Shown: positions 37,749 to 64,000 of the stretch, piece by piece
Numbering within the stretch: the first letter of the stretch is position 1
Layout: each line of letters starts with the position of its first letter
IMG/VR virus record: IMGVR_UViG_3300035212_003113
Coordinates: 186,001 to 250,000 of that record
DNA length: 64,000 bases
Reading direction: 5' to 3' (one strand)
Program-made: the position numbers and the translations under genes
Notes under the pieces: generated by a model
Told to the model about the DNA's origin: nothing
Databases searched by the model: none
The model's input: only the letters and a program-made list of their open reading frames with translations

Positions 37749-37885
37749 TAATTAAATACGGGACATCCGAGGCCGCCGAAGTAATCGATGCGAAGAATAT
37801 TCCTTCGTGGGTGACTCGCGATCCGCCGAAATCCGAGCAGGATGGCGTGACGGAGTCTGACGATAATACAGAGGAAAAAGAATGA
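37745..37885 (+). CDS. 46-aa micro-protein absent from the ORF track
   Basis: MIIKYGTSEAAEVIDAKNIPSWVTRDPPKSEQDGVTESDDNTEEKE; ATGA overlaps at both ends, SD AAGGA. Confidence 0.65.
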   Translation: MIIKYGTSEAAEVIDAKNIPSWVTRDPPKSEQDGVTESDDNTEEKE

Positions 37886-40800
37886 GTATTGTCAAGCATG
37901 CCTTTATCGATGGCGTTTCTATTGGAATACTAGATAACAACAAACTCAATGATGATCCGGGCGTACAAGCCCGGTTTGCGGCCGTCACGAACAAGCTTCG
38001 TGACGAGCAAAAGAAGCGCGGCAGCAAGGAGCTCTCTCCTTATGTGGATGACTTCCTTTATGCCAGCTGCATTATGATGCATGCTGCAGAGGCAGCACTT
38101 GTCAATCAGGAGACGGGTGAACCGATCAAGACTGCGGCCGGCAAGTCGGCTGCAGGTTGGTTCGAGAAATACGATATCGATGGCGGCAAAGAGACTGCTC
38201 GCTGGGTATCGCCAGATGGCATTCGCCCAGTAAAGAATAACAATGGAGATATCTTCCCAGAATCCGAGCTACTAAAGGCCTATAAGAACTGGGTCGGCAA
38301 GCCGCTCTGCAAAGATCATGTGTCTAGCTCCGTAGACGGCATCCGCGGCGTAATCGTAGATACGTATTATGATCCAAAGTTTAAGCGTGTTCACGCGCTA
38401 TTTGCACTTGATAAGAAGAACTATCCCGATCTCGCCCGCAAGGTAGAGGCCGGCTATGCCACCAATGTCTCTATGGGCACGGCGGTTGGTCGCTCTATCT
38501 GCAGCGAGTGCCAGAACGTTGCAACCGTAGCATCTGAATTCTGCTCGCACGTCAAGTCGCGTACGCATTACGGCGAGATCAACTTTGATCTAAATCCAAT
38601 TGAGCTGAGCATCGTTGTCACCGGTGCAGATCCGCGTGCGAAGATTCGCAAGATTGTTGCAAGCCTAGACGAGTACCGTGCCCAGGCAGAGGAGCTGCGC
38701 AAGGTAAAAGGCGCTCCGCTAGAGGAGCTTGATCAGATTTCTGCAAACATCAAGGCTGCCGCAGCAGTTGCGGAAGAGATCGACGTAAAGCCGGTACTGT
38801 CCGACATAATCAGTATAATGGAGACATCAGAGCCTGGCAGTGGCGCCTTTGGTGATGCAACAGATAAGCTTGTCGCTCTGCTCTCGGAAGAGGGTAATGC
38901 TGAAGCCGTTTACTCTAACATCAAAGATGATCGCCCTCTGGTCGATTCGTTGCTAAATGCTCTACGAAGAGCTAAGGCACAGGATCTGGTGGAAAAGCTG
39001 AATTCTCTAAGGATTCAGAATGTGTCAGTGCCATCGATGCAGTCAACGGATACGACCAAGACGGTTGGCAGTGTAGATGGCGCGCTATCTAATTTGAATA
39101 CTAGCATAAAACCCAGCTCAACGCTGGGAGATATAGAGCTAGAGAACCAGGTAAGTGCGTTTGCTCCAGGTACCCGTGACATGTCCGGTCTGCAGCAATT
39201 TGCAGCATTATATACAGATGGCGTAGCCACAAAAGACGGGCAGCTGCTTGAAAAAGCAGCTAATGATCTGGCAGGCAGAATAACATCTATTAAAAACAGT
39301 TTGGATAGTTTGAAATCGTGTCTCCCGACCCAGAAGGCGGGAGTGGGAACAGGAGATATTATGACGTTTGATGAACTACGGAAGCGTGCTAACCTGCGGA
39401 AGAAGGCTTACATGCAGGGAACTGAGGAACCAAAGTCTTACCCCGCCATGGGAAATCCGGATCTACGTGATGGCGACCATCACCTACACGGTGAAGAGCT
39501 CGACACCTCCGTAGCTAATCCAGACCAGAAGACGAAGGAAATGCTGCTTCGCGCGTCGCTTAACGAGCGCCGTACTGCCCGCGCAGAGAAGCTGAAGGCC
39601 ATTGCTGAAATGGCTGTTGTCGTCAAGGACCAGTCAGGCAATCCAGCCGGCGCAATTGTCAACAAGAAGTTCGTTCCAAAGGCAATGGCTGATGATGGCC
39701 ACGACGCCGATGACGCCGATCACGCTGAAGACGGCGATCACGCCGCTGATGCCGAGCTCAAGAAGGCAGAGGCCGCTCTCGTTCAGCGCCTTGAGATGCT
39801 GAAGGAAGCCGCTAAGAAGAAGGCCAAAAAGCCAGTTAAGGAAGAAGAAGAGGATAAGCCTGCCAAGGGCGGCAAGGATGCCAAGAAGGCTAAGCCAACC
39901 AAGGGCGACGACAAGATGGACAAGATGAAGAAGAAGGCTTATCCACAGGGCACTGCTGAGCCAGAGTCATACAAGCCAATGGGCGATCCAGACCTCCGCG
40001 ACGGCGATCATCACCTGGGTGGCAAGGAGCTCGACACCAAGGCAGGCAATCCTGATCAGAAGGTCAAGGAGCTAATTCAGCGCGCCGGCCTAAAGGCTCG
40101 TCTCACCAAGTCGGCCAACGTTGCAAACTCACGTTGGGCAGTCCTCGCAGGCGACAAGGAAGTGTTCTCGGTCACCGCCGGCGATGCGTACAATGTTCAC
40201 CTTAATAAGCAGAGCGATGTTGCTGGCAAGACCTGGGGCGATCTGTTCGTTTCGCCAGCCTATGGCAAGCAGCTTATGGCGCAGATTCGCGCTGGCAAGA
40301 TTAGCAAGTTGGCAGAAGAGCTTGATGCTGCGAAGCAGTCAGTTGATGCTCCGGCCGCTGATGCAGCTCCAGCCCCCGCCGCTGCACCAGCTCCGGCCCC
40401 AATGGTAGATGTCGTTCCAGAAGCCAAGGGCGATGACGACATGAAGGACAAGCTCATGGCCGCTCTCGAGAAGCTCGAGGAGTGCATGCAGAATCTAAAA
40501 GACATTGTCATGGGCTCCGATAAGGGCGTAGACAACGTTGATGTAGATACCATGGCCGCTACGGCTTCACTCGACCGTGGCATGTTCGAGGCTCACGCAG
40601 AGCTGGCTTCGCTGGCTAGCGAGCTCAGCTTCCTCGCCAAGGAAGCAAATCTGAGCGTTCCGTCGGTACGCCTTGCTGCTCGCGCGGCAATCCGTGACGG
40701 TCACCTCGCTGCAATCGAGGCTAACGAGCGCATCGCTGAGTACGCCGATGCCTGCGACGGCGGCATGTATGTTCTCGATGAGGAGGAGCTAGAAGAGGTC

Positions 40801-41691
40801 GCCGAGGAAGTCGAGGAGGCTATTGAAGAGCACGATGAGGAGGAGCACGGCGATCTAGACAAGGCCCTAGAGGACCTCCGCAAGGAGCTTGCCGAGCTCG
40901 AGGACAAGGTTGATGAGCTCGAGGAAGAGGTCGAGGAAGGCGAAGAGGACGAGGAGAAGGAGTCGGACGCTATGGACGACAAACTCGCCGCCCGCGCCGC
41001 AATGCGCCAGCAGCTCGTTGCTCGCGCCGCGAAGGCTGATATGGTCACCGCAGATCCGATGTTGAATATTCACGGCAAGGGCGAGGGCAAGCTCGACCTC
41101 GGCATGAATATCTCGGATGATGGCGATGTCGTTGAGAGCGTATTCGAGGTACAGCAGAAGGTCATGAATACTCTTGGCGAGAAAGTCAAGAAGGCCGCTG
41201 CCGGTATCGCTGAGGCCGTCCGCAAGGGCGTCCTGAAGGATTCGCAGCTCGATGTACTCGTTGCTACCGCTGCAGTCGATGCAGAGGCCGTTAAGTACTA
41301 CCGCGATTACTTCGCCGGCGCCGATGCCGACTTCGCCAAGGGCCTTGTTGCAGAGTTCAAGAAGTCTGCTTCCGCCACAGAGGACGTTGGCTTCCGTTAC
41401 AAGCGCGCATACGCAGTAGCAATCGATGCACAGGCTCGCAACCTAATTGGCACCGGCCGCGCCGCTCTTGATGAGTGCGCCGACACGCTGGCCAACGGCA
41501 GCGACGCGAACTTCGATAGCTTCAAGCGCATGGTTGGCAGTGTCAAGACCTCTGTCCGTACGGCCGGTGTCGTACCCCAGATGGGCGTCGTTGATGGCGG
41601 CGAAGCCACGAATACGCGCACGGCCTCGGACAATGGTTCCGTTGATGTACGCGATTGGCGCAGCCTAGGCAAAGCGCTGTTCGATATCTGA
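37882..41691 (+). CDS. Prohead maturation protease fused to scaffold/core protein
   Basis: NNNGDIF, GKPLCKDH (His), VSMG (Ser), CxxC...CxH, ELSIV..GAD as in HK97/assemblin-fold proteases; long charged coiled-coil C-terminus. Confidence 0.8.
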   Translation: MSIVKHAFIDGVSIGILDNNKLNDDPGVQARFAAVTNKLRDEQKKRGSKELSPYVDDFLYASCIMMHAAEAALVNQETGEPIKTAAGKSAAGWFEKYDIDGGKETARWVSPDGIRPVKNNNGDIFPESELLKAYKNWVGKPLCKDHVSSSVDGIRGVIVDTYYDPKFKRVHALFALDKKNYPDLARKVEAGYATNVSMGTAVGRSICSECQNVATVASEFCSHVKSRTHYGEINFDLNPIELSIVVTGADPRAKIRKIVASLDEYRAQAEELRKVKGAPLEELDQISANIKAAAAVAEEIDVKPVLSDIISIMETSEPGSGAFGDATDKLVALLSEEGNAEAVYSNIKDDRPLVDSLLNALRRAKAQDLVEKLNSLRIQNVSVPSMQSTDTTKTVGSVDGALSNLNTSIKPSSTLGDIELENQVSAFAPGTRDMSGLQQFAALYTDGVATKDGQLLEKAANDLAGRITSIKNSLDSLKSCLPTQKAGVGTGDIMTFDELRKRANLRKKAYMQGTEEPKSYPAMGNPDLRDGDHHLHGEELDTSVANPDQKTKEMLLRASLNERRTARAEKLKAIAEMAVVVKDQSGNPAGAIVNKKFVPKAMADDGHDADDADHAEDGDHAADAELKKAEAALVQRLEMLKEAAKKKAKKPVKEEEEDKPAKGGKDAKKAKPTKGDDKMDKMKKKAYPQGTAEPESYKPMGDPDLRDGDHHLGGKELDTKAGNPDQKVKELIQRAGLKARLTKSANVANSRWAVLAGDKEVFSVTAGDAYNVHLNKQSDVAGKTWGDLFVSPAYGKQLMAQIRAGKISKLAEELDAAKQSVDAPAADAAPAPAAAPAPAPMVDVVPEAKGDDDMKDKLMAALEKLEECMQNLKDIVMGSDKGVDNVDVDTMAATASLDRGMFEAHAELASLASELSFLAKEANLSVPSVRLAARAAIRDGHLAAIEANERIAEYADACDGGMYVLDEEELEEVAEEVEEAIEEHDEEEHGDLDKALEDLRKELAELEDKVDELEEEVEEGEEDEEKESDAMDDKLAARAAMRQQLVARAAKADMVTADPMLNIHGKGEGKLDLGMNISDDGDVVESVFEVQQKVMNTLGEKVKKAAAGIAEAVRKGVLKDSQLDVLVATAAVDAEAVKYYRDYFAGADADFAKGLVAEFKKSASATEDVGFRYKRAYAVAIDAQARNLIGTGRAALDECADTLANGSDANFDSFKRMVGSVKTSVRTAGVVPQMGVVDGGEATNTRTASDNGSVDVRDWRSLGKALFDI
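39361..41691 (+). CDS. Predicted nested in-frame scaffold protein (776 aa) from internal ATG
   Basis: AGGAG at 39351-39355, CTATTAA at 39287, apparent codon-usage shift downstream. Confidence 0.6.
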   Translation: MTFDELRKRANLRKKAYMQGTEEPKSYPAMGNPDLRDGDHHLHGEELDTSVANPDQKTKEMLLRASLNERRTARAEKLKAIAEMAVVVKDQSGNPAGAIVNKKFVPKAMADDGHDADDADHAEDGDHAADAELKKAEAALVQRLEMLKEAAKKKAKKPVKEEEEDKPAKGGKDAKKAKPTKGDDKMDKMKKKAYPQGTAEPESYKPMGDPDLRDGDHHLGGKELDTKAGNPDQKVKELIQRAGLKARLTKSANVANSRWAVLAGDKEVFSVTAGDAYNVHLNKQSDVAGKTWGDLFVSPAYGKQLMAQIRAGKISKLAEELDAAKQSVDAPAADAAPAPAAAPAPAPMVDVVPEAKGDDDMKDKLMAALEKLEECMQNLKDIVMGSDKGVDNVDVDTMAATASLDRGMFEAHAELASLASELSFLAKEANLSVPSVRLAARAAIRDGHLAAIEANERIAEYADACDGGMYVLDEEELEEVAEEVEEAIEEHDEEEHGDLDKALEDLRKELAELEDKVDELEEEVEEGEEDEEKESDAMDDKLAARAAMRQQLVARAAKADMVTADPMLNIHGKGEGKLDLGMNISDDGDVVESVFEVQQKVMNTLGEKVKKAAAGIAEAVRKGVLKDSQLDVLVATAAVDAEAVKYYRDYFAGADADFAKGLVAEFKKSASATEDVGFRYKRAYAVAIDAQARNLIGTGRAALDECADTLANGSDANFDSFKRMVGSVKTSVRTAGVVPQMGVVDGGEATNTRTASDNGSVDVRDWRSLGKALFDI
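39394..40092 (+). repeat. Two copies of a 56-aa repeat (39394-39561, 39925-40092)
   Basis: KKAY.QGT.EP.SY..MG.PDLRDGDHHL.G.ELDT...NPDQK.KE...RA.L, 38/56 identical by hand. Confidence 0.9.
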
Positions 41692-52614: not shown

Positions 52615-53619
52615 ATGTCAAATCTTTTTGATAACTCAGGCGAGCTCGGTGGTCTGACCACCCGCGACGCGCTGAAGAGCCTCGTTCGCATTGCCAAGGT
52701 TCTAGAGGAGGGCATGCCCTCGAACGCCGTCGCCGCTGGTCGTCCTTCGACCACCGAGACGCAGCGTGATGAGCTCGTCCGCCAGGCCATCCTCGATCAG
52801 GGCGGCAAGGTCGCTCTCGCCCAGGCCATGGCGCTCCCAATCCGCCGCAACCTTGATTACTCGGGCGTTGCTCGCCGCGGCCTCGTCGTTGACGAGCTCG
52901 CCACCGGCGTTCTCCCGCTTTACGAGCGCGATATCGATGTCGCTGCATTCGTAATCTCGGCCAATGGCGCAGTTCCAGAGAGCCCCGTCCGTGGCGACCG
53001 CGTATTCGTTCCAGAGTTCGACATCGCCTGTCACCCACTCGTTCGTATCCGTGAGGCTCGCCAACGCCGCTTCAACGTCATCGAGCGCACCGTTCAGAAG
53101 GCCAAGCAGGAGATCGCCGCGACCGAGGACGCTAACTTCTTCGCCGCTCTCGACTTCGCTGCTGACGCCGCCCTCGGTGGTGAGAACACCGCCCAGGTTC
53201 TCGGTGCCCGCATCTCGCGCGCCGACATGGTTGAGATCAAGTCAGAGGTCGATCAGTGGGACTTGCTCACCAGCAAGTTCTTCATGAACATCCGCGACTT
53301 CCAGGACCTGCTCCTCTGGACGTCACAGGGTGGTACGTCGGCTGCCGAGGTTGATCCGGTAACGCACCGCGAGATCCTCCAGACCGGTCTCTACGCCAAG
53401 CTGTTCACCGCTGACATCATCGTCAGCAAGCTCGTTCCCTTCGGCAGCGTCTTCGGCTGCGCAGAGCCCGACATGGTCGGCGTAATGCCAATTCGCCAGA
53501 ACGTCGAAGTCGTTCCGAACGACAAGATGGATCGCCTCAGCCTCGGCTGGACGGTATTCGAGACCATCGGCATCGGCGTAGTCAACGCTCGCGGCGTTGC
53601 AGTCGGTCGCAAGGCCTGA
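52615..53619 (+). CDS. Major capsid protein (HK97 fold)
   Basis: LAQAMALPIRRNLDYSG..R..L.VD.L..G..P.Y, VPEFDIA, AKQEIAATEDANF, GWTVFETIGIGVVNARG; strongest codon bias in the window; SD GGAG. Confidence 0.85.
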   Translation: MSNLFDNSGELGGLTTRDALKSLVRIAKVLEEGMPSNAVAAGRPSTTETQRDELVRQAILDQGGKVALAQAMALPIRRNLDYSGVARRGLVVDELATGVLPLYERDIDVAAFVISANGAVPESPVRGDRVFVPEFDIACHPLVRIREARQRRFNVIERTVQKAKQEIAATEDANFFAALDFAADAALGGENTAQVLGARISRADMVEIKSEVDQWDLLTSKFFMNIRDFQDLLLWTSQGGTSAAEVDPVTHREILQTGLYAKLFTADIIVSKLVPFGSVFGCAEPDMVGVMPIRQNVEVVPNDKMDRLSLGWTVFETIGIGVVNARGVAVGRKA

Positions 53620-53736: not shown

Positions 53737-54090
53737 GTGAATTTTCTAGATTTTATTTTTCGCAAGTACGAGGAACCGGTTGAGCCAGCCGATGGCTATC
53801 TTACTCACTCACCTGTAACACATTCTATAATGCGTCCAGGCGTCTATGAGTGCTTTGGACGAGAAGTAAAGATCCTTGGATTCGACCAGGCCGGGCAGCT
53901 CTTTGCCACCTTATATATGTGCCACAAGGGTACCGGAGAATGCTCAGAATGGCGTACGCTGGGTTTCCATAGGATGTCCAGCGGAGATGGTGACGAGACG
54001 TGGGACTGTCTGATAGATAAGTGCGCAATCGTCCTTCACGCTGCTGAGCAAGGTGGAAGGCTTAAAGTAAAGATAGAGGTAGATAAATGA
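53737..54090 (+). CDS. Hypothetical protein
   Basis: SD AGGAG before GTG 53737; coupled to thyA. Confidence 0.6.
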   Translation: MNFLDFIFRKYEEPVEPADGYLTHSPVTHSIMRPGVYECFGREVKILGFDQAGQLFATLYMCHKGTGECSEWRTLGFHRMSSGDGDETWDCLIDKCAIVLHAAEQGGRLKVKIEVDK

Positions 54091-54941
54091 CAGAAGCAGC
54101 TTACCTAGATACAATGCGCCAGATAATAGATCATGGCATCGAAATAGGTGATCGCACAGGAGTAGGTACGCGAGCGATATTTGGAGCTCAGCTTAAATTT
54201 GATATGGCTGATGGGTTTCCTCTTTTGACGACACGTCGCATCGCATTCAGGATTGCATTTGAAGAAATGATGTGGTTTCTCAGAGGGCAGACCGATTCAA
54301 AGATCCTTGAGGGCAAAAAGATCAATATATGGAAGGGTAACTCTACCCGGCATTTTCTAGATTCTCGTGGCCTGCATCATCTGAGCGAAGGCGACATAGG
54401 GGCGGGATATGGTCACCAGTTACGAAATTTTAATGGTAGCGCTGCTTCTCCTGGCCATGATCAGCTAGCGGCAATTGTTTCAGAGGTCCAGAGAAATCCT
54501 CATAGCCGCCGCCACTTTGTTAGTTACTGGAATCCTCAGCAGGTTCTAACAGAAGCCGCTTTGCCGCCGTGTCATGTGAGTTGGGCGCTGCAGGTTGCCG
54601 CTGGTCGCCTTAATCTATCTTTTCAGATGAGGTCTAATGACTTTTACCTGGGGAATCCTACGAACATAGCTGGCTACGGTTTTTTGCTGCATGCTCTTTC
54701 AAGGCTATTTTCGCTTGAGCCAGGCTTGCTTGTATTCCAGGGCTCGGATGTGCACCTGTATTCCAACCAGCTAGAAAATGCCAAGATTCAGGTAACAAGG
54801 CAGCCACTGCAGCTTCCGCAGTTGCGGATAATTCCAGATCTGCAGTCACTTGACGACCTGCTGCGCCTAGAATTCTCAGACATAGAGCTGCTCAATTATA
54901 GTCATCATCCAGATCTGCCGAAAGTCGAGATGGCCGTATGA
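54087..54941 (+). CDS. thyA: Thymidylate synthase
   Basis: DRTGVGT, FPLLTT, YGHQLR, SRR, ALPPCH, MRSND..LG.P.N, DVHLY. Confidence 0.97.
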   Translation: MTEAAYLDTMRQIIDHGIEIGDRTGVGTRAIFGAQLKFDMADGFPLLTTRRIAFRIAFEEMMWFLRGQTDSKILEGKKINIWKGNSTRHFLDSRGLHHLSEGDIGAGYGHQLRNFNGSAASPGHDQLAAIVSEVQRNPHSRRHFVSYWNPQQVLTEAALPPCHVSWALQVAAGRLNLSFQMRSNDFYLGNPTNIAGYGFLLHALSRLFSLEPGLLVFQGSDVHLYSNQLENAKIQVTRQPLQLPQLRIIPDLQSLDDLLRLEFSDIELLNYSHHPDLPKVEMAV

Positions 54942-55393
54942 GAGCATTCCGGCTAATAGGCATCGCCGCTGTTTCAGAAAATGGTGTAATCGGAGCTGAC
55001 AACTCTCTGCCATGGAATTTGCCAGAAGACCTGGCTTGGTTCAAGAGCATTACTCTTGGTAGTACTCTTGCAATGGGTCGAGCTACATTTGAATCAATAG
55101 GGCGTCCTCTGCCTGGTCGTACCACGTATATACTTACGCGTAGCCCTCGCACAGAGATGGAGATCTCCTCAATCGACGACATATCCAAGCACACTGGGAG
55201 AGTTTTCCTCTGTGGTGGCTCAGAGATATATGCCAGGTATTTGTTTGAGTGTGACGAGCTGCTAGTTACCCGTGTTTTCGGCGAGTATGCAGGCGACAAA
55301 TATTTTCCTTATTTTGCTCACAAATTTTCGCTTGCAGAGATAATAAAGGAAACGGCTGCATTTCGTATAGAAAGGTATAGCAGAAACAAATGA
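54938..55393 (+). CDS. folA: Dihydrofolate reductase
   Basis: NGVIG..NSLPWNLPEDL, MGRATFESIGRPLPGR, CGG, GDKYFP. Confidence 0.96.
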   Translation: MRAFRLIGIAAVSENGVIGADNSLPWNLPEDLAWFKSITLGSTLAMGRATFESIGRPLPGRTTYILTRSPRTEMEISSIDDISKHTGRVFLCGGSEIYARYLFECDELLVTRVFGEYAGDKYFPYFAHKFSLAEIIKETAAFRIERYSRNK

Positions 55394-55977: not shown

Positions 55978-56874
55978 GTGGCAAAGGTAGAGCCAGTTTT
56001 ACCTAAATTCTTGGTAAAGAATATAAGCGGCGGCGACCTGCTTATTCTTAACTCATTTCCTATTCGCCCAGGCCAAACAATCGACGTATACAAGTCTGCA
56101 GAGTACCAGTCTGATCGCGTAGATGTCACTAATATGATCTTGCGCGGCCTGGAGATGCCAGATGGCGACATTTATGTTAAATGGAAGATTAAGCGCAAGA
56201 TAGAGGTTCTTGAATTCCAGAATCCCAATTACCAGGGAAATGGAATTACTGCAAACAAGATACAGACGACGAACGACTACTTTGAGGGTGCTGTTCTATC
56301 TGTCGTCGGCGGCAAGCTCGTGTGGATGGATTCAGCAGCCAGTGCAATGGCTTCTGATTTCTTGCTTCTTGCTCCAGACAGTGGTCTTCCTAATAGCCGT
56401 GTTCTTACTGGAGAAGTTGGCGAAATAGATCTTCAGGATGCTGGGCCGGGCAGCAGCGTCAACATTGCTCTTGCAGATACTGCAGTCTCTCCTGGTAGCT
56501 ATGGCTCTACGCTTCAGATTCCTAACTTCACAGTAGACGGCAAAGGACGCATAACCTTTGCAGCAAATACGCCACTGCCTCCTATTGGCCAGAATATAAA
56601 TGGCATCAGAAGGGTGAGTACCGATGTATCAATCTCTTCCGAGACAGATTTTACGCTTCTTGTTGACGCCAGTGCTGGGCAGGTAGTCATAACATTGCCG
56701 ACACCAACAATCGATGGCATGCTCTTTAACATAAAGAAGGTCGACACTAGCGATAACTTCGTAGTAGTTTCGCCGGAGACAGGGCTGCTCGACGGAGACA
56801 GCACGCAGCTCATCATAGATCCATGGCAAAGCATGTCTGTTCAATCCCTTGATGGCGACTGGTTCATCATATAG
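55978..56874 (+). CDS. Virion fibre/adaptor protein with shared C-terminal beta domain
   Basis: TAVSPGSYG...FTVDGKGRITFA fibre repeat; TLP...IKKVD...DG...DGDWFII; SD GGAGG. Confidence 0.7.
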   Translation: MAKVEPVLPKFLVKNISGGDLLILNSFPIRPGQTIDVYKSAEYQSDRVDVTNMILRGLEMPDGDIYVKWKIKRKIEVLEFQNPNYQGNGITANKIQTTNDYFEGAVLSVVGGKLVWMDSAASAMASDFLLLAPDSGLPNSRVLTGEVGEIDLQDAGPGSSVNIALADTAVSPGSYGSTLQIPNFTVDGKGRITFAANTPLPPIGQNINGIRRVSTDVSISSETDFTLLVDASAGQVVITLPTPTIDGMLFNIKKVDTSDNFVVVSPETGLLDGDSTQLIIDPWQSMSVQSLDGDWFII

Positions 56875-56966
56875 CCGTTTGCGTTATCTTATAATAATTG
56901 TGTATAACGCGAAAGCAAAAGTGTAGCCAAGGAAAGCAGGAAGGTCAGCCAACAAAGGGAGCATAA

Positions 56967-58346
56967 ATGACCTTTAGACCATATACTGGTAAGGTCAGGC
57001 TTGGCGACTCGGATATCTTCCTAGATATTTCCGATTTTTCGCAGCCTGAATATGATGGATATGTACTTTCTCGTAGTGGAGAGACAATTGTCGCCACTCT
57101 TATCGGCCAGAGCAAACTGGCACTGTCAGAGCCTCAGAATCCAAGTGATGCCGCAACGAAGGCATACGTAGATTCAGTTGTCGCCTCGGTTGATCCGGCT
57201 GGCGACGTAGGCCAGATCCAGTTTAACCTGGATAACGACAACATGGGCGCCAGCCCGAATTTTGCATGGAATGACTCTACCAGCACCCTGAGTGTTTCTG
57301 GTAAGGTCTCAGTAAGTGGCGAATTCGTAATTGCCGAGAGCGTAAACCTGCCAGCCGGTCAGTCCGGTGCAGGCAAGCTGGCAGCCAAGGATAACGGAGC
57401 CCTGTACTTCGTTGATTCCGACGGCTACTCGCACTACGTAATGCCCGATGGCCTCGTGACGCTATCTGGTCTTTCGCCTGTTGTTGACTTCTCGCCAGAG
57501 CTGCCCTCATTCAGAACGATCAACCTTTCGGGCACAACTGCTTTCTCCGCTTCCAACTACGGCAGCGGCCGCGCAGTCAGCGTAAGAATGGTTGCTGGCG
57601 CTAGCACAAGAGCAATCAGTTTTCCAAATGGTTGGAAGTGGCTTGGCGGCGGCAGTGGTCCAACCTCTGTCCCAGCAAACAAGGTCGCGATGGTCTCGGT
57701 CGTATCCTATGGATCCGATGAGTCTGATGTAGTTGCCGGTTGGTCGTACACTGACTCTGCGGTTATCACTGGTAACGCCACCACTGGTCAAATAGCATTT
57801 TTCAATGGTGATCGTAATATTTCAGGCGAAACAAACCTGCAGTGGGATGCAGCTAATGATCGCCTGCTTATCGGCAGCGTAGCATCGCCAGCAGCAAGTC
57901 TGCATGTAGCAGGCACAGTTCAGGTCGATGGTACAGCGTCTTTCACTCAGTCGCCTTCTATGGGCGGCAACAGAGTTACGGATGTTGCTTCGCCTTCGGC
58001 AGATACTGATGCTGTTAACAAGAGCTATGTAGAGTCAAGAAGGCTATATAGCATACAGATGGTAACGGCAGACGCGTCTATTGAAGCCGACAAGGATCTT
58101 GTGTTCGTGGGCGGCGCTGGTAGTTCAGTACTTAGACTGCCTCTCGCCACTGTCTCGAATGCAGGCAAGGCCATTACGATCAAGAAGACGAATACAGGAG
58201 AAGCAGATCTCGTAGGCACTCAGATTGGCTCAGGCCAGTCGGTCGACGGGACGCAGGTCGACGGAACCTCCGTCTACTACAACATTTTCCTGCAGAATGA
58301 AACTGTCACGCTTGTTAGCGATGGCAGCAACTGGTTCGTAATCTGA
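56967..58346 (+). CDS. Fibre protein 1 (MTFRPY family)
   Basis: Shared N-terminus, DAATKAYVD/DAVNKSYV neck motifs, shared C-terminal domain ending SDGSNWFVI. Confidence 0.8.
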   Translation: MTFRPYTGKVRLGDSDIFLDISDFSQPEYDGYVLSRSGETIVATLIGQSKLALSEPQNPSDAATKAYVDSVVASVDPAGDVGQIQFNLDNDNMGASPNFAWNDSTSTLSVSGKVSVSGEFVIAESVNLPAGQSGAGKLAAKDNGALYFVDSDGYSHYVMPDGLVTLSGLSPVVDFSPELPSFRTINLSGTTAFSASNYGSGRAVSVRMVAGASTRAISFPNGWKWLGGGSGPTSVPANKVAMVSVVSYGSDESDVVAGWSYTDSAVITGNATTGQIAFFNGDRNISGETNLQWDAANDRLLIGSVASPAASLHVAGTVQVDGTASFTQSPSMGGNRVTDVASPSADTDAVNKSYVESRRLYSIQMVTADASIEADKDLVFVGGAGSSVLRLPLATVSNAGKAITIKKTNTGEADLVGTQIGSGQSVDGTQVDGTSVYYNIFLQNETVTLVSDGSNWFVI

Positions 58347-58394
58347 TAGACTGGGAAGGTCGCCGCCGCGTCGTCATGCGGCCTTTCCCGTCTA
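58347..58394. other. Long intergenic hairpin without T-tract
   Basis: TAGAC..GGGAAGGTCGC / GCGGCCTTTCCC.GTCTA. Confidence 0.55.
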
Positions 58395-58466
58395 ATAATA
58401 ATATAGCATAGTCCGCAAGCGAACATAGTTAGGTAAGCGAGCAAGCCTAAACAAATAGGAGTCCAC

Positions 58467-61229
58467 ATGACTTTTAGACCATATGCCGGAAAAGTCCGTC
58501 TTGGTGATTCGGACGTTTTCCTTGATATCTCAGAGCTGCAGGACGGGTATGTCCTTTCGCGCAGCGGCAGCGAAGTCGTTGCCACCCTAATCGGCCAGGA
58601 CAAGCTGGCCCTCGGCACCCCTTCACGCGGCTCAGATGCTGCGACGAAGGAGTACGTTGACGGCCTGGTTGATTCCGAAGAGGCCCGCGCCATCGCCGCA
58701 GAGTCTGCAATCCAGGCAGAAGTTGACGCAGAGGAAGTTGCCCGCGCAGCTGGTGACACGACTCTCACCACGAACCTCAATGCAGAGATTGCCCGCGCAA
58801 CCTCCGCAGAGGCCGGCCTGCAGAGCCAGATCAGCAGCATCGTCTCAAACGTTGACCCAGCTGCTCTCGACTCACTGACCGAGATCGTTGATGCTTTCCA
58901 GGGTGCCGACGGTTACATCCTCGATTCACTCGCCTCGCTCTCGACCGGTTCAAACTCGGCCCTCCAGGCAGAGATCAACCGTGCTACCGCTGCAGAAGTT
59001 GCCCTCCAGGCAGCTCTTGATGCAGAAGTAGTTGCTCGTGGCGCCGATGTTGATGCAGAAGAGGCTCGTGCAATGGCAGCAGAGGCTGATCTTGCCTCTG
59101 ACCTCTCCGACGAGGAAGCTGCCCGCATTGCAGGCGATGCAGCTCTTTCTGCCAGCCTTGCTGCAGAGGTTGCTCGTGCGACCGCCGCTGAGGGTGTCCT
59201 CACGACCAATCTCAGCAATGAGGTTGCCCGCGCAACCGCCGCTGAGGGCGTTCTGCAGAGCAACATCGATGCAGAAGAGGCCCGTGCTCTCGCCGCAGAG
59301 GCCGGTCTCCAGAGCGACATCGACGCAGAGGAGGCTCGTGCTCTTGCTGCTGAAGGCGCTCTTCAGAGCGAGCTTGATGCAGAAGAGGCCCGTGCTCTCT
59401 CGGCCGAAGGCGTTCTTCAGGACAATATCGATGCAGAGCAATCCGCTCGTGTATCGGCAGACAGCGTAGAGCAGGCTGCTCGTATCGCTGGCGACGCAGC
59501 ACTTCAGGCTGCTATCGATGCAGAGGCCGCTGCCCGCGCCGCTGGCGACCTTTCGCTCCAGGGCGATCTTACCTCCGAGGTAAATCGCGCAACTGCTGCA
59601 GAGGCCGCTCTGCAGGCAGAGATTGACGCAGAGGAAGTCCGCGCCGCTGCCGCAGAGGCAACGCTGACCTCCAACCTTGCAGCAGAGATTGCTCGTGCAA
59701 CGGCCGCAGAGGGCGTTCTTACGACCAACCTCAGCAACGAGGTTTCACGCGCAACTGCCGCCGAGACCGCTCTCCAGGGCGAGATCGACGCAGAAGAGGT
59801 CCGTGCTCTCGCAGCCGAGGCCGCCATTCAGGCAGAAGTCGATGCAGAAGAGGTTCGTGCCCTCGCTGCAGAGGCCGGTCTCCAGGGCGAGATTGACGCA
59901 GAGGAAGTTGCCCGCGCAGCTGGCGACACGACTCTCACCACGAACCTCAATGCAGAGATTGCCCGTGCAACCTCCGCAGAGGCCGGTCTGCAGAGCCAGA
60001 TCAGCAGCATCGTTTCGAACGTTGATCCAGCTGCTCTTGACTCGCTGACCGAGATCGTTGATGCCTTCCAGGGTGCCGACGGCTACATTCTCGACTCACT
60101 CGCCGCACTGTCGTCCGGTTCAAACTCCGCCCTCCAGGCAGAGATCAACCGTGCAACGGCTGCAGAGGTAGCTCTCCAGGCATCAATTGATGCCGAGGTC
60201 TCAGCCCGCACTGCAGACGTCAATGCAGAGGAGAGCCGCGCTCTCGCTGCAGAGGCAACCCTCCAGAGCAACATCGACGCAGAGGCAGTTGCCCGCGCAG
60301 CAGATGTTGATGCAGAAGAGGCTCGTGCACTTGCCGCCGAGGCAGGTCTCCAGAGCGATATCGATGGTGAAGAGGCCCGCGCTCTCGCCGCCGAAGGCGT
60401 GCTCCAGGGCAACATTGATGCAGAAGTTGCTCGCGCAACCGCTGCAGAGGGTGTTCTTACGACCAACCTCTCCAACGAGGTTTCCCGTGCAACGGCCGCT
60501 GAGGGCGTTCTTCAGGGCAACATCGACTCCGAGATTGCTCGCGCTCTTGCCGCAGAGGATGCACTCGATGCAGCCATCACTGCAGAAGAGACCCGCGCAA
60601 TGGCAGCCGAGTCCGCAGAGGCTGCTGCTCGTGCCGCTCAGGACACCGTCCTCGAGGGCATGATCAACACCGAGACCGTGAATCGCCAGGCTGATGTCGA
60701 TGCAGAAGAGGCCCGCGCTCTTGCTGCAGAGGCAGTTGTTCAGGCCGCCGTTGATGCAGAGGTTGCTCGCGCAACCGCCGCAGAAGGCGTCCTCACGACC
60801 AACCTGAGCAACGAGGTTTCCCGTGCAACCGCTGCAGAGACCGCTCTTCAGAGTGAGATTGATGCAGAGGAAGTTGCTCGCGCAGCAGCAGACTCGGCCC
60901 TTGATGGTCGCGTCGGCTCGCTCGAGGCAACCCGCGCTCGCATGTCGGGCGTCCAGAGCGTTTCGGCTGATGCAGGCGTTGCTGGCGACAAGGACATTGT
61001 CCTCGTCACCTGCTCGTCGGTTGACGTTGTTGTCACGCTGCCCGCAGCATCGTCTGCTTCCGGCCGCATGATCTTCATCAAGAAGATCGATGCCACCAGC
61101 CACGATGTCGTTGTCAAGTCGGTCTCCGGCTCCATCGACGGTACGGCTGCCAGCACCGGCAAGCACATCTACCTGCAGTACGAAGCAATGACCGTTGTTT
61201 CGGATGGCTCGAACTGGTACATCGTCTGA
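58467..61229 (+). CDS. Fibre protein 2: long Ala/Glu coiled-coil stalk
   Basis: Shared N-terminus, 18-residue repeats (AEGVLTTNLSNEVARATA), two DPAALDSLTEIVDAF necks, shared C-terminal domain. Confidence 0.85.
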   Translation: MTFRPYAGKVRLGDSDVFLDISELQDGYVLSRSGSEVVATLIGQDKLALGTPSRGSDAATKEYVDGLVDSEEARAIAAESAIQAEVDAEEVARAAGDTTLTTNLNAEIARATSAEAGLQSQISSIVSNVDPAALDSLTEIVDAFQGADGYILDSLASLSTGSNSALQAEINRATAAEVALQAALDAEVVARGADVDAEEARAMAAEADLASDLSDEEAARIAGDAALSASLAAEVARATAAEGVLTTNLSNEVARATAAEGVLQSNIDAEEARALAAEAGLQSDIDAEEARALAAEGALQSELDAEEARALSAEGVLQDNIDAEQSARVSADSVEQAARIAGDAALQAAIDAEAAARAAGDLSLQGDLTSEVNRATAAEAALQAEIDAEEVRAAAAEATLTSNLAAEIARATAAEGVLTTNLSNEVSRATAAETALQGEIDAEEVRALAAEAAIQAEVDAEEVRALAAEAGLQGEIDAEEVARAAGDTTLTTNLNAEIARATSAEAGLQSQISSIVSNVDPAALDSLTEIVDAFQGADGYILDSLAALSSGSNSALQAEINRATAAEVALQASIDAEVSARTADVNAEESRALAAEATLQSNIDAEAVARAADVDAEEARALAAEAGLQSDIDGEEARALAAEGVLQGNIDAEVARATAAEGVLTTNLSNEVSRATAAEGVLQGNIDSEIARALAAEDALDAAITAEETRAMAAESAEAAARAAQDTVLEGMINTETVNRQADVDAEEARALAAEAVVQAAVDAEVARATAAEGVLTTNLSNEVSRATAAETALQSEIDAEEVARAAADSALDGRVGSLEATRARMSGVQSVSADAGVAGDKDIVLVTCSSVDVVVTLPAASSASGRMIFIKKIDATSHDVVVKSVSGSIDGTAASTGKHIYLQYEAMTVVSDGSNWYIV
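58723..60182 (+). repeat. Near-identical ~290-bp direct repeat (58723-59012 and 59893-60182)
   Basis: Colinear at offset 1170 with mostly synonymous differences; related third copy near 62640-62870. Confidence 0.9.
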
Positions 61230-61256
61230 TAATTAGCTATTAAAGCTAATTAAGGC

Positions 61257-61286
61257 CCGGCCCCAGAGATGGGGCCGGTTCTTTTT
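61257..61286 (+). terminator. Intrinsic terminator
   Basis: CCGGCCCCA-gaga-TGGGGCCGG-TTCTTTTT. Confidence 0.9.
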
Positions 61287-61427
61287 CTATTAAAAAACTG
61301 GCGTTCTTGCGCGCTAGGATAGCATTTGGCGTTTCAGCGAGCTCGATGCTAGGGTACACTCTCTTGGTATGCAGAAGTCCCATGGCAAGAGTAAGTGAAA
61401 TCATAAAGGTAAAGCAGGAGTAAAAAG

Positions 61428-64000
61428 ATGACTTTTAGACCGTATGCTGGCAAGGTACGCCTTGGCAACACAGATGTGTTTCTTGATATCTCAGAGCTGC
61501 AGGATGGCTATGTGCTATCGCGCGAAGGCTCAGAAATCGTCGCAACTCTTATCGGGCAGGATAAGCTTAGCCTAAGTGCTCCGCTTAATGATTCCGATGC
61601 AGCGACCAAAGCCTATGTTGACGCGGCCCTTTCTGGCGCTGTTTCAGATGGATATGTCGATCTTGAGGCTGAGCGCATTGCCCGCATTGCTGCGGACAGC
61701 TCGCTACAGGGCCAGATTGACAACATTGTATCAAATCTCGACCCGGCTGCGCTGGACTCGCTAACTGAAATCGTTGCAGCTTTCCAGGGAGCCGACGGCG
61801 ACCTGAGCACGTCCATCAGCTCGCTTGCAGCATCTGCGAGCTCTGCTCTGGCTGCAGAGACTGCAGAGCGCATTGCTCAAGACGGTTATATTTCTGCAGA
61901 TTTGGATGCAGAGATTGCCCGCGCCACGGCAGCCGAGGCCGCACTGGAAGCAGAATTGGCCACAGAAGAGGCTCGTGCTATTGCTGCTGAGGCACTGCTC
62001 CAGGCCGCGGTTGACGCAGAGGCTGCTCGTGCAGCTGCCGCAGAGGCAGCTCTGGCTGACGATATTGCCGCAGAACAGGCTGCTCGTATTGCTGGTGATG
62101 CAGCACTCGCCGCAGATCTTGATACTGAAGAGGCTCGCGCCCTCGCCGCAGAGGCAGATCTTGCTGCAGATATTACTGCAGAAGAGAACGCTCGCCAGGC
62201 CGCAGATCTTGCTGAAACCGCTGCCCGTATTGCTGGTGACGAGAGCCTTCAGGCGGCTCTGACGAGTGAGATAAATGATCGCCTTGCCGCAGACCTTGCT
62301 GTTCAGGCCGACCTGACCTCCGAGGTTAGCCGTGCTCTTGCTGCAGAAGCCGCAATTCAGGCAGAAGTTGATGCAGAAGAGGTAGCCCGTGCTGCCGGTG
62401 ACGCACAGCTGACGTCTGATCTCGCTGACGAGGTTTCCCGTGCAACCGCTGCAGAGACCGCTCTCCAGGGCGAGATCGACGCAGAGGAGCTTGCTCGCGC
62501 TGCTGCTGATACCGCTCTTGAGGCAGATATCGCAGCAGAAGAGGTACGCGCTCTGGCTGCGGAGGCAGCTCTACAGAGCGACCTCTCGGACGAGACCGCT
62601 GCCCGCATTGCTGGTGACGCAACACTGACTGCAGACCTGTCTGCAGAAGTCGTTCGTGCAACGGCTGCAGAGGCCGGCCTACAGAGCCAGATCAGCAGCA
62701 TTATCTCGAACGTGGATCCTGCGGCACTCGACTCCCTTACGGAGATCGTTGACGCATTCCAGGGTGCAGATGGTTATATTCTAGATTCGCTCGCTGCGCT
62801 TTCAAGCGGCACGAACTCTGCTCTCCAGGCAGAGATTGTTCGCGCAACTGCGGCAGAAGTTGCCCTGCAGGCAGCTATCGATGCAGAGGCTGCAGCTCGC
62901 GCAGCAGATGTTGACGCAGAAGAGGCCCGTGCTCTTGCGGCAGAAGTTGCCCTCCAGGCAGCCATTGATGCCGAGGCAGTAGCCCGCGCCGCTGACGTTG
63001 ATGCAGAGGAAGTTCGTGCCCTTGCTGCAGAGGCAGCACTGGCAGCCGATATTGCCACGGAAACTGCTCGTGCCACAGCGGCCGAGGCGGTTCTGACGGC
63101 AGATCTCGCTACAGAGGTTGCTCGCGCCACGGCAGCCGAAGGCGTTCTGACGTCAAATCTTAACTCCGAGATTGCTCGCGCTCTTGCTGCAGAGGATGCA
63201 CTCGACGCGGCAATCGCTGCCGAGACTGCTCGTGCAACGGCAGCAGAAGGCACGCTGACCGCCAATCTAAATAGCGAAATTATACGCGCCACGGCCGCCG
63301 AGCTGGCTCTTGATAATGCAATAGATGCAGAGGCAGCCGAGCGCGCAGCGCAGGACGGTTATCTTGCTGCAGATATTGCCGCAGAGGAGGCTCGTGCTCT
63401 GGCTGCTGAGGCCGCAGAGGCAGCTGCCCGCGCCGCCGCTGACGACGCGCTCGATGCTCGCCTTGACGGCATGGAGTCTGAGCGTAGCCAGATGGTACTG
63501 TTTGAGACGGCACCACAGGTTTATGCAGACGGTTCGCCTGGCTCGATTGATCCGATTGATGTCTCGCGTCTTCTGTTGTCGCCACCGCAGTCGCCTGTTC
63601 GCAATGGCTGGTATTTCCGCAACGCGGTAGCTAGCTCGAAGATCAACTGGTACCTGTTCGACGGTCTTGCGAATCCGGTAAAGGTCGGCAGCACGGCTGC
63701 GCCTGACCTTAATGGCTATATGGTCGTCACTGTTGACGGCAATGGTCTTTCGACCGGTCAAAACGTTCCAGTCTCTGGCCGTCCTTGGTTCTCGATGTAC
63801 GCAGGCACAAATATTGCTGCATTCCTGAATCGCGTAACCTTCCAGGTTCCATCGACAACCTCTCTCCCGGCCAAGACAAAGGTGATTCTTTACTTTGGTC
63901 AGGATCCGGGTGCCACGGTATATCCCGCCGATCAGACTCTGCAGCGCATTGCAATGACCTCTGTTTCTACCTCGGGTTCGCCTACGGCCGGAACGCAGGT
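61428..64000 (+). CDS. Fibre protein 3 (3'-truncated; absent from the ORF track)
   Basis: SD AGGAG, MTFRPYAGKVRLGNTDVFLDISELQDGY, coiled-coil stalk, then a different beta domain (GWYFRN...KINWYLFDG); open to the window edge. Confidence 0.9.
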   Translation, partial: MTFRPYAGKVRLGNTDVFLDISELQDGYVLSREGSEIVATLIGQDKLSLSAPLNDSDAATKAYVDAALSGAVSDGYVDLEAERIARIAADSSLQGQIDNIVSNLDPAALDSLTEIVAAFQGADGDLSTSISSLAASASSALAAETAERIAQDGYISADLDAEIARATAAEAALEAELATEEARAIAAEALLQAAVDAEAARAAAAEAALADDIAAEQAARIAGDAALAADLDTEEARALAAEADLAADITAEENARQAADLAETAARIAGDESLQAALTSEINDRLAADLAVQADLTSEVSRALAAEAAIQAEVDAEEVARAAGDAQLTSDLADEVSRATAAETALQGEIDAEELARAAADTALEADIAAEEVRALAAEAALQSDLSDETAARIAGDATLTADLSAEVVRATAAEAGLQSQISSIISNVDPAALDSLTEIVDAFQGADGYILDSLAALSSGTNSALQAEIVRATAAEVALQAAIDAEAAARAADVDAEEARALAAEVALQAAIDAEAVARAADVDAEEVRALAAEAALAADIATETARATAAEAVLTADLATEVARATAAEGVLTSNLNSEIARALAAEDALDAAIAAETARATAAEGTLTANLNSEIIRATAAELALDNAIDAEAAERAAQDGYLAADIAAEEARALAAEAAEAAARAAADDALDARLDGMESERSQMVLFETAPQVYADGSPGSIDPIDVSRLLLSPPQSPVRNGWYFRNAVASSKINWYLFDGLANPVKVGSTAAPDLNGYMVVTVDGNGLSTGQNVPVSGRPWFSMYAGTNIAAFLNRVTFQVPSTTSLPAKTKVILYFGQDPGATVYPADQTLQRIAMTSVSTSGSPTAGTQ

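What the first reader, a model, noticed from the sequence alone, without database searches (positions are those of the whole stretch)
55978..64000. Fibre genes with interlocking shared ends: possible daisy-chain or branched fibre
Seen: N-module (MTFRPY.GKVRLG..D.FLDIS...DGYVLSR.G...VATLIGQ.KL) in 56967, 58467 and 61428; C-module (TLP...IKK.....V....DG.......S.DG.W.I) in 55978, 56967 and 58467. The series is X-C, N-C, N-stalk-C, N-stalk-Y. Inference: either three alternative fibres compete for one socket, or N docks on C so that an anchor, extenders and a tip assemble into a very long appendage, for example for catching motile or EPS-coated hosts.
Basis: partly seen in the sequence, partly recalled or inferred. 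Interest (0 to 1): 0.65.

Follow-up and report, generated by a model that had tools for sequence, protein, structure and literature searches.

The report
Paralogous phage fibres sharing plug and knob
A freshwater jumbo phage carries a row of five related fibre genes that reuse a lineage-specific N-terminal attachment piece and a very common C-terminal knob domain; this looks like ordinary modular fibre evolution, and nothing found here supports fibres plugging into each other end to end.

Summary
The fourth gene is cut by the window edge. Read in full (1003 aa), it also ends in the C-module. A fifth gene (428 aa) follows with a divergent N-module and a C-module, and a sixth C-module lies about 90 kb away. 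So there is no N-stalk-Y tip.

The window is part of a 371,675-bp virus record whose capsid protein is closest to that of Bacillus phage G. Identical sequence turns up in lake and river metagenomes.

The C-module folds with high confidence (pLDDT 96) as a T4 gp9/gp10 'XD1'-type beta-sandwich. It best matches the C-terminal domains of a solved tailspike depolymerase and of the Pa223 capsid spike. Its profile hits about 51,000 cluster representatives, and the named look-alikes are mostly phage proteins.

The N-module is rare: only six other proteins carry it, and all six also end in the C-module. It is far better conserved than the C-module and is under strong purifying selection.

Best reading: these are paralogous trimeric fibres with one N-terminal virion plug, variable shafts and a distal knob. 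N-on-C docking has no support, but it is not excluded. Whether the fibres sit on the capsid or the tail is unresolved.

The parts
55978..56874 (+). Fibre gene 1 (P0001, 298 aa): a unique ~100-aa N-terminal part, one fibre repeat unit shared with the 1444-aa downstream protein, then the C-module (residues ~206-298, nt 56593-56871). It has no N-module.
56967..58346 (+). Fibre gene 2 (P0002, 459 aa): N-module (nt 56967-57182), a beta-rich body conserved in relatives, then the C-module (residues 361-459, nt 58047-58343).
58467..61229 (+). Fibre gene 3 (P0003, 920 aa): N-module (nt 58467-58670), a ~750-aa alanine-rich stalk built on a 54-nt (18-aa) repeat with two 'NVDPAALDSLTEIV' interruptions, then the C-module (residues 826-920, nt 60942-61226).
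61428..64000 (+). Fibre gene 4, cut by the window end. The full protein P0005 is 1003 aa (genome 247428-250440): N-module (nt 61428-61631), a ~640-aa stalk, an unclassified ~190-aa domain 'Y' (from nt ~63561), then a C-module that lies outside the window.
52615..53619 (+). Context: the major capsid protein gene, 2.3 kb upstream of the fibre row (phrog_2522; 44.8% identical to the Bacillus phage G major head protein).

Best explanation
The region is a row of paralogous trimeric fibre genes in a phage-G-like freshwater jumbo phage. The genes arose by duplication and by exchange of their central parts.

N-module (about 70 residues). It has a conserved leader of about 12 residues (MTFRPYxGKVRL), a segment resembling a triple-beta-helix fibre, and a 'DAATKxYVD' motif. 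I infer that it is the proximal plug that fixes each fibre to one kind of socket on the virion.

Central part. This sets reach and probably specificity. It is absent or short in some genes, a beta-rich body in gene 2, and a repeat stalk of about 640-750 aa in genes 3 and 4. That stalk would be about 100 nm long if it is an alpha-helical coiled coil.

C-module. This is a distal, trimer-forming XD1-type beta-sandwich knob. It is a very common phage fibre and tailspike end domain that probably caps or nucleates the trimer and may bind glycans.

Shown: the homology, the copy numbers, the C-module fold, the rarity of the N-module and the selection acting on it. Inferred: trimer state, polarity (N proximal, C distal), the socket, and any glycan binding.
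For: Gene set and module positions:
- Six C-modules, all at the extreme C-terminus, and four N-modules, all at the extreme N-terminus.

C-module fold:
- AF2 on a 70-sequence alignment gives pLDDT 96.
- A profile search of PDB sequences gives 24qj at E 4e-4 and T4 gp10 at E 4e-3.

Solved precedent for the whole layout:
- Pa223 gp52 is a homotrimer with a 40-residue N-terminal attachment domain, a triple beta-helix and a C-terminal knob.

C-module abundance:
- 51,247 cluster representatives at E<=1e-3, many with tandem copies.
- Atlas and BFVD look-alikes are almost all Uroviricota. They include pectate-lyase tailspikes, collagen-repeat fibres and Peptidase_S74 fibres.

N-module rarity and constraint:
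- Only six other proteins carry it, and all six also end in a C-module.
- One relative has a short (443 aa) and a long (768 aa, with stalk) version of the same body.
- Among the members other than P0006, N identities are 67-88% against 31-83% for the C-modules. Among genes 2-4 of this phage the figures are 74-79% against 41-53%.
- For the gene 3/gene 4 pair the N-module has dN/dS 0.05; synonymous sites are saturated in all three pairs, so these are old duplicates held by selection, not recent gene conversion.
- N-module residues 13-70 resemble a fibre segment of phage hyaluronidase HylP (E 2e-3).

Other:
- Weak PHROG matches of genes 2 and 5 are to tail-fibre and head-decoration families.
Against: - No partner for the N-module was identified.
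- The trimer state and polarity are by analogy only.
- The full-length model of gene 2 was unusable (pLDDT 41), so the N-module fold is not known.
- The window's own C-modules do not reach any Pfam model, including PF25692 Phage_depo_C.
- The hydropathy of the stalk peaks at a period of 4.5 and 2.25 residues, not the 3.5-3.6 expected for a coiled coil. Its helical nature rests on composition, on YadA_stalk hits in relatives and on a marginal sigma-1 match (E 0.08).
- Three fibres with nearly the same plug imply either competition for one socket or many equivalent sockets. Neither is shown.
Confidence: 0.62

Rival explanations
1. Daisy-chain or branched fibre. The N-module of one protein docks on the free distal face of the C-terminal knob trimer of another, so that gene 1 (X-C) or the distant 1122-aa protein acts as the anchor and the N...C proteins act as extenders or branches.
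For: The C-module belongs to the gp9/gp10/TSP4 domain family found in proteins that organise branched receptor-binding complexes. Because it is C-terminal, its distal face has no downstream linker, which removes the objection raised for XD1 in TSP4. Every N-bearing protein found also carries a C-module.
Against: - The supposed tip does not exist. Genes 4 and 5 also end in C, so nothing would terminate a chain.
- The fold is XD1, reported as a non-docking spacer, not XD2/XD3.
- The C-module occurs in about 51,000 cluster representatives, whereas the N-module was found in only six other proteins.
- The N-modules are nearly constant while the C-modules are 31-56% identical. That is the opposite of what specific pairwise joints would produce.
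- A simpler account, common descent of an N...C ancestor, explains the co-occurrence.
Confidence: 0.07
2. The same fibre family, but mounted on the capsid or neck as head fibres or whiskers rather than on the baseplate. A giant capsid offers many equivalent sockets, so several fibre types with one plug need not compete. This is a sub-variant of the best explanation, concerning location only.
For: The row starts 2.3 kb after the capsid gene and follows terminase, portal and a protease-domain gene. The tail sheath and Baseplate_J genes lie 25-45 kb further on. Pa223 capsid spike gp52 has the same layout and a matching C-terminal knob. Weak PHROG matches of genes 2 and 5 include 'head decoration' families.
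Against: Gene position is weak evidence in a jumbo phage. The same PHROG scans also give tail-fibre families. The best structural match is a tailspike C-terminal domain. More fibre-like genes lie between this row and the sheath gene.
Confidence: 0.3
3. The C-module is an intramolecular chaperone that is cut off after trimer assembly, as in endosialidase-type fibres, so it is shared only because it is a folding aid.
For: It is always at the extreme C-terminus. It follows collagen-like or coiled fibres in other viruses, where C-terminal domains often nucleate trimer folding.
Against: There is no match to Peptidase_S74 in these proteins, while a neighbouring-cluster protein does have one. The fold differs from that chaperone and equals knobs that are retained in solved mature proteins. 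Many relatives carry it internally or in tandem.
Confidence: 0.05

Closest known systems
Pseudomonas phage Pa223 capsid spike gp52 (PDB 9ny6)
   Different: There is no detectable sequence similarity (9% identity). It is a single gene and a short spike of about 10 nm. Here there are five or six paralogs, two of them with stalks of about 650-750 aa, and the mounting site is unknown.
C-terminal beta-sandwich of tailspike depolymerases (Acinetobacter phage Solidus gp83, PDB 24qj; Pfam PF25692 Phage_depo_C)
   Different: The window's proteins have no beta-helix enzyme domain and do not reach the Pfam model.
XD1 domain of T4 gp10 / T4 gp9 / CBA120 TSP4 (branched receptor-binding complexes; also RaK2)
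   Different: In those phages XD1 sits near the N-terminus, next to the anchor, and is regarded as a spacer. Docking there uses the XD2/XD3 jelly-rolls, and no such domain was identified here (PF07880 gave no hit; no search aimed specifically at XD2/XD3 was run). Here the domain is the last domain of each fibre.
T4 fibritin, reovirus sigma-1 and trimeric autotransporter stalks
   Same: An N-terminal anchor, a long repetitive stalk and a C-terminal trimer-forming domain. Relatives carry precomputed YadA_stalk hits, and there is a marginal sigma-1 match.
   Different: The helical coiled-coil nature of the stalk is not shown, and the C-terminal domain is not a foldon.

Membership tests
XD1-type beta-sandwich (T4 gp9/gp10 domain 1, CBA120 TSP4 XD1, tailspike C-terminal knob) | A mixed beta-sandwich of about 95 residues that superposes on solved members | tested here: met
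XD1-type beta-sandwich (T4 gp9/gp10 domain 1, CBA120 TSP4 XD1, tailspike C-terminal knob) | Detectable sequence relationship to solved members | tested here: met
   The 70-sequence profile hits 24qj at E 4e-4 and T4 gp10 residues 58-122 at E 4e-3. Significant but weak.
XD1-type beta-sandwich (T4 gp9/gp10 domain 1, CBA120 TSP4 XD1, tailspike C-terminal knob) | Packs as a trimer round the fibre axis | not tested
   Only a monomer model was made.
Pfam PF25692 Phage_depo_C | Score over the curated cut-off of the Pfam model | tested here: not met
   No hit for the window's proteins or their isolated C-modules even at E<=10, and no hit in the genome. Only a distant relative, P0133, matches (31.8 bits).
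Branched receptor-binding complex of the CBA120 / RaK2 / G7C type | A hub protein with XD2/XD3 jelly-roll docking domains | tested here: not met
   The shared C-module aligns with XD1, not with XD2/XD3. PF07880 gives no hit in the genome. Other proteins of the phage were not folded, so a hub elsewhere is not excluded.
Branched receptor-binding complex of the CBA120 / RaK2 / G7C type | Physical binding of one fibre's N-terminal region to another fibre | tested here: inconclusive
   The complex prediction of 3xC plus 3xN gave no verdict. This is not evidence either way.
Trimeric alpha-helical coiled-coil fibres (fibritin, sigma-1, YadA stalk) | Heptad- or hendecad-type hydrophobic periodicity of about 3.5-3.7 | tested here: inconclusive
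   The 18-aa repeat is clear, but the hydropathy power peaks at 4.5 and 2.25. Alanine is 29-33% of the stalk. YadA_stalk hits occur only in relatives, and the sigma-1 match is at E 0.08.
Endosialidase-type intramolecular chaperone (Peptidase_S74) | Match to PF13884 at the C-terminus | tested here: not met
   No hit in the five fibre proteins. The model works in this genome, since a different 1081-aa protein hits it.

The most novel reading that the evidence does not exclude
In this phage lineage the conserved N-terminal plug has been adapted to dock on the free distal face of the C-terminal XD1-type knob of a sister fibre. Short and long paralogs would then assemble into branched or serial appendages, a use of XD1 not described so far.
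Probability: 0.07. Interest if true: 0.75.

Novelty: new member of a known kind. Interest (0 to 1): 0.3.

Why it matters
The practical gain is for annotation. The shared C-terminal end is a very abundant phage fibre and tailspike domain, with about 51,000 cluster representatives. Current Pfam models miss it in these proteins, yet it can now be placed in the XD1/knob fold class.

The rare, strongly conserved N-terminal plug marks a fibre family of phage-G-like freshwater jumbo phages. It gives a handle for finding the fibres' socket on the virion. One plug carried on fibres of about 430 to 1000 aa suggests layered reach in host capture.

None of this overturns current ideas about modular receptor-binding proteins.

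Tried and rejected
- Complex prediction of three C-modules with three N-modules: score 0.11 against a mark of 0.32, so no verdict. I count it neither for nor against binding.
- Full-length AF2 model of gene 2 from a 7-sequence alignment: mean pLDDT 41, unusable. No fold is claimed for the N-module or the body.
- Pfam scans of the whole proteins and of the isolated modules: nothing significant.
- megablast and tblastn against the INPHARED phages with the region and with gene 2: no match.
- The search for related loci with the 6-sequence C alignment failed because no block was conserved enough. With the N alignment it returned only proteins that share the generic 'ATKxYVD' fibre motif at internal positions.
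- Atlas search for domain Y of gene 4: scores below 0.8, so no lead.
- Hydropathy Fourier analysis of the stalk did not give the coiled-coil period.
- Laying contigs of four lake and river runs on the region (5252 letters, under the 6000 limit): pieces identical to the window plus cross-mapping of the stalk repeats.
- Phage G gene order after its capsid gene: no comparable fibre row.
- Intramolecular-chaperone reading of the C-module: rejected, as set out under the rival explanations.
Full report
**What is in the sequence**

Each has a Shine-Dalgarno-like GGAG a few bases before its start.

The first ~70 residues of genes 2, 3 and 4 are 74-79% identical. The last ~95 residues of genes 1, 2 and 3 are homologous, with BLASTP E 2e-12 and 5e-17. 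Both modules are far beyond chance.

**Beyond the window**

The window is bases 186001-250000 of a 371,675-bp virus record with direct terminal repeats.

- Gene 4 runs 440 nt past the window. The whole protein is 1003 aa and ends in a C-module 53-54% identical to that of gene 3.
- A fifth gene follows 82 nt later. It is 428 aa, with a divergent N-module (40-44% identity), several generic 'P...DAxxKxYVD' fibre units, and a C-module.
- Next come a 1444-aa repeat-rich fibre-like protein without either module and a patatin-like phospholipase.
- A sixth C-module ends a 1122-aa ORF about 90 kb upstream on the other strand, inside a second group of proteins of about 1100 aa.
- HMMs made from the copies find exactly six C-modules, each ending at the last residue of its ORF, and exactly four N-modules in the genome.

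The series is X-C, N-C, N-stalk-C, N-stalk-Y-C, N'-shaft-C.

**The phage**

The window holds the following genes:

| Gene | Window start |
|---|---|
| Large terminase | 30249 |
| Portal | 32156 |
| 1274-aa protein with a head-protease domain | 37867 |
| Major capsid protein | 52615 |

The capsid protein is 44.8% identical to that of Bacillus phage G. A weak tail-sheath match lies at genome 280.8 kb and a Baseplate_J match at 299.4 kb. The fibre row thus sits between the head and tail gene blocks.

Public lake-water and river metagenomes from several studies hold the region. Some contig pieces are identical to the window.

**The C-module**

A profile of the six copies hits 51,247 cluster representatives at E<=1e-3 and 16,857 at E<=1e-10. 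Many hits have several tandem copies, up to 24 matched stretches in one protein, placed internally or at the C-terminus. Examples include pectate-lyase-type tailspikes.

|---|---|
| C-terminal domain of Acinetobacter phage Solidus gp83 tailspike depolymerase (rmsd 2.0, 91 residues) | 13.9 |
| CBA120 TSP4 residues 75-175 | 11.3-11.8 |
| gp10 of a T4-like Klebsiella phage | 10.5 |
| T4 gp9 middle domain | 9.7 |
| T4 gp10 residues 30-146 | 9.4 |
| Pa223 capsid-spike C-terminal domain | 9.4 |
| CpaA | 8.5 |
| StcE | 7.4 |

The profile also finds 24qj (E 4e-4) and T4 gp10 (E 4e-3) by sequence alone.

TSP4 residues 80-178 are the XD1 domain. The paper that solved it reports gp9 and gp10 as structural relatives, notes that the glycan-binding modules of CpaA and StcE share the fold, and concludes that XD1 acts as a spacer while XD2 and XD3 carry the partner tailspikes. 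The RaK2 study says the same.

Atlas and BFVD look-alikes are almost all tailed-phage proteins. They are largely unnamed, but some are attached to pectate lyase, collagen repeats, Peptidase_S74 or T4_gp9_10_N.

The window's own copies reach no Pfam model, PF25692 included.

**The N-module**

A word-based search of 5.8 billion proteins, limited to lengths of about 250-800 aa, found six other carriers. One is a 99% identical copy of gene 2 and the other five are 71-85% identical. All six also end in a C-module.

In one related contig, a short form (443 aa: N, body, C) and a long form (768 aa: N, stalk, the same body, C) lie 8 kb apart on opposite strands, among large Laminin_G_3 proteins.

Leaving out the divergent gene 5, N-modules are 67-88% identical to one another. 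Among genes 2-4 of this phage the C-modules are only 41-53% identical, and those of genes 1 and 5 and of the distant protein fall to 26-39%.

Between the paralogs the N-module DNA is only 63-70% identical, with saturated synonymous sites. dN/dS is 0.05 for the one pair in which it could be computed, gene 3 against gene 4. These are old duplicates kept by selection, not products of recent gene conversion.

Residues 13-70 resemble a fibre segment near the C-terminus of streptococcal phage hyaluronidase (E 2e-3). Residues 18-68 resemble internal units of unrelated fibre proteins. The truly private part is therefore the leader of about 12-17 residues.

**The stalks**

Genes 3 and 4 carry about 750 and 640 residues respectively that are 29-33% alanine. 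The stalks are built on a 54-nt (18-aa) unit, and each has two copies of a 'NVDPAALDSLTEIV...' interruption. PHROG 13589 covers them.

Precomputed YadA_stalk hits in relatives and a marginal sigma-1 match point to a trimeric helical stalk. If so, it would be about 95-110 nm long at 0.15 nm per residue, which is an inference. The hydropathy spectrum peaks at 4.5 and 2.25 residues rather than 3.5-3.6, so I leave this open.

**How it most likely works**

By analogy with solved trimeric fibres, each protein is probably a homotrimer. The closest case is Pa223 gp52, with an N-terminal attachment of 40 residues, a triple beta-helix and a C-terminal knob of the same fold.

- The N-module fixes the fibre to the virion.
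- The middle part sets its length and probably its target.
- The C-module forms the distal knob.

Three nearly identical plugs, plus one divergent plug, imply one class of socket. These could be many equivalent sites (for instance on a very large capsid) or a shared baseplate site. The gene position next to the capsid gene and the Pa223 precedent make a capsid or neck mounting a serious possibility, at about 0.3. The tail-fibre PHROG matches and the tailspike match keep the tail in play.

**The chain idea**

The asymmetry that motivated the chain idea is gone. The fold is the non-docking member of the gp10-like set. The C-module is far more widespread than the N-module. The N-modules are constant while the C-modules diverge. 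Common descent from an N...C ancestor, with exchange of the middle part, explains why the two ends travel together.

Because the knob is C-terminal, its outer face is free, so a lineage-specific docking cannot be ruled out. I give it about 0.07. The one complex prediction allowed gave no verdict and is not used as evidence.

**Verdict**

The daisy-chain reading is unsupported, and the 'shared socket' reading is plausible.

This is a new member of a known kind: modular paralogous phage fibres. It has two points of modest interest, a hugely abundant but poorly annotated knob domain, and a lineage-specific plug shared by fibres of very different length.

Noticed in passing
window 54087-55393: Two overlapping ORFs (284 aa and 151 aa) between the capsid gene and the fibre row look by eye like thymidylate synthase (it contains the 'LPPCH' motif) and dihydrofolate reductase. 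These are nucleotide-metabolism genes wedged inside the structural block. No family scan was run on them.
   Followed up: no
L011:15216-16016 (genome 256216-257016): A patatin-like phospholipase (PF01734, E 5e-25) lies directly after the 1444-aa fibre-like protein that ends the row. It could be a virion-associated lipase or a host-takeover enzyme.
   Followed up: no
L012:400-10298, minus strand (genome 146.4-156.3 kb; a fourth ORF at 142.6-146.1 kb): A second group of ORFs of about 1100 aa. One has a tailspike PHROG and a Peptidase_S74 chaperone, one has head-decoration and virion-protein PHROGs, and one (P0008) ends in the sixth C-module. The fourth ORF (1181 aa) was not scanned.
   Followed up: partly
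L012:11489-13390 (genome 157.5-159.4 kb): A 633-aa protein with an Exostosin GT47 glycosyltransferase domain (E 1e-21), next to the second fibre group. This family is unusual in a phage.
   Followed up: no
window 56887-56898 and 58391-58402: The 12-mer TCTWATAATAAT occurs only twice in the 64-kb window, each time 65-80 nt upstream of the start of fibre genes 2 and 3. The chance expectation is 0.46, and 6 of 100 shuffles reach 2 matches. It may be a late-promoter element, or simply part of the duplicated unit.
   Followed up: partly
window 58671-60940 and 61632-63560: The stalks are built on a 54-nt / 18-residue unit, but hydropathy power peaks at 4.5 and 2.25 residues, not at the 3.5-3.6 of classical coiled coils. 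This is unexplained.
   Followed up: partly
window 37867-41688: A 1274-aa ORF in which only residues ~120-235 match a head maturation protease. The remaining ~1000 residues are unassigned.
   Followed up: no
L022 / L025 (relative contig, JGI 3300043504): In a related phage the two N...C fibre genes flank proteins of 1703 aa and 1108 aa with Laminin_G_3 lectin-like domains and a small sigma-70 region-4 protein.
   Followed up: no
window 55978-61229: Contig pieces identical to the window occur in lake-water and river metagenomes from several independent studies and years, 2020-2025. The phage is widespread in fresh water. Its host is unknown.
   Followed up: partly
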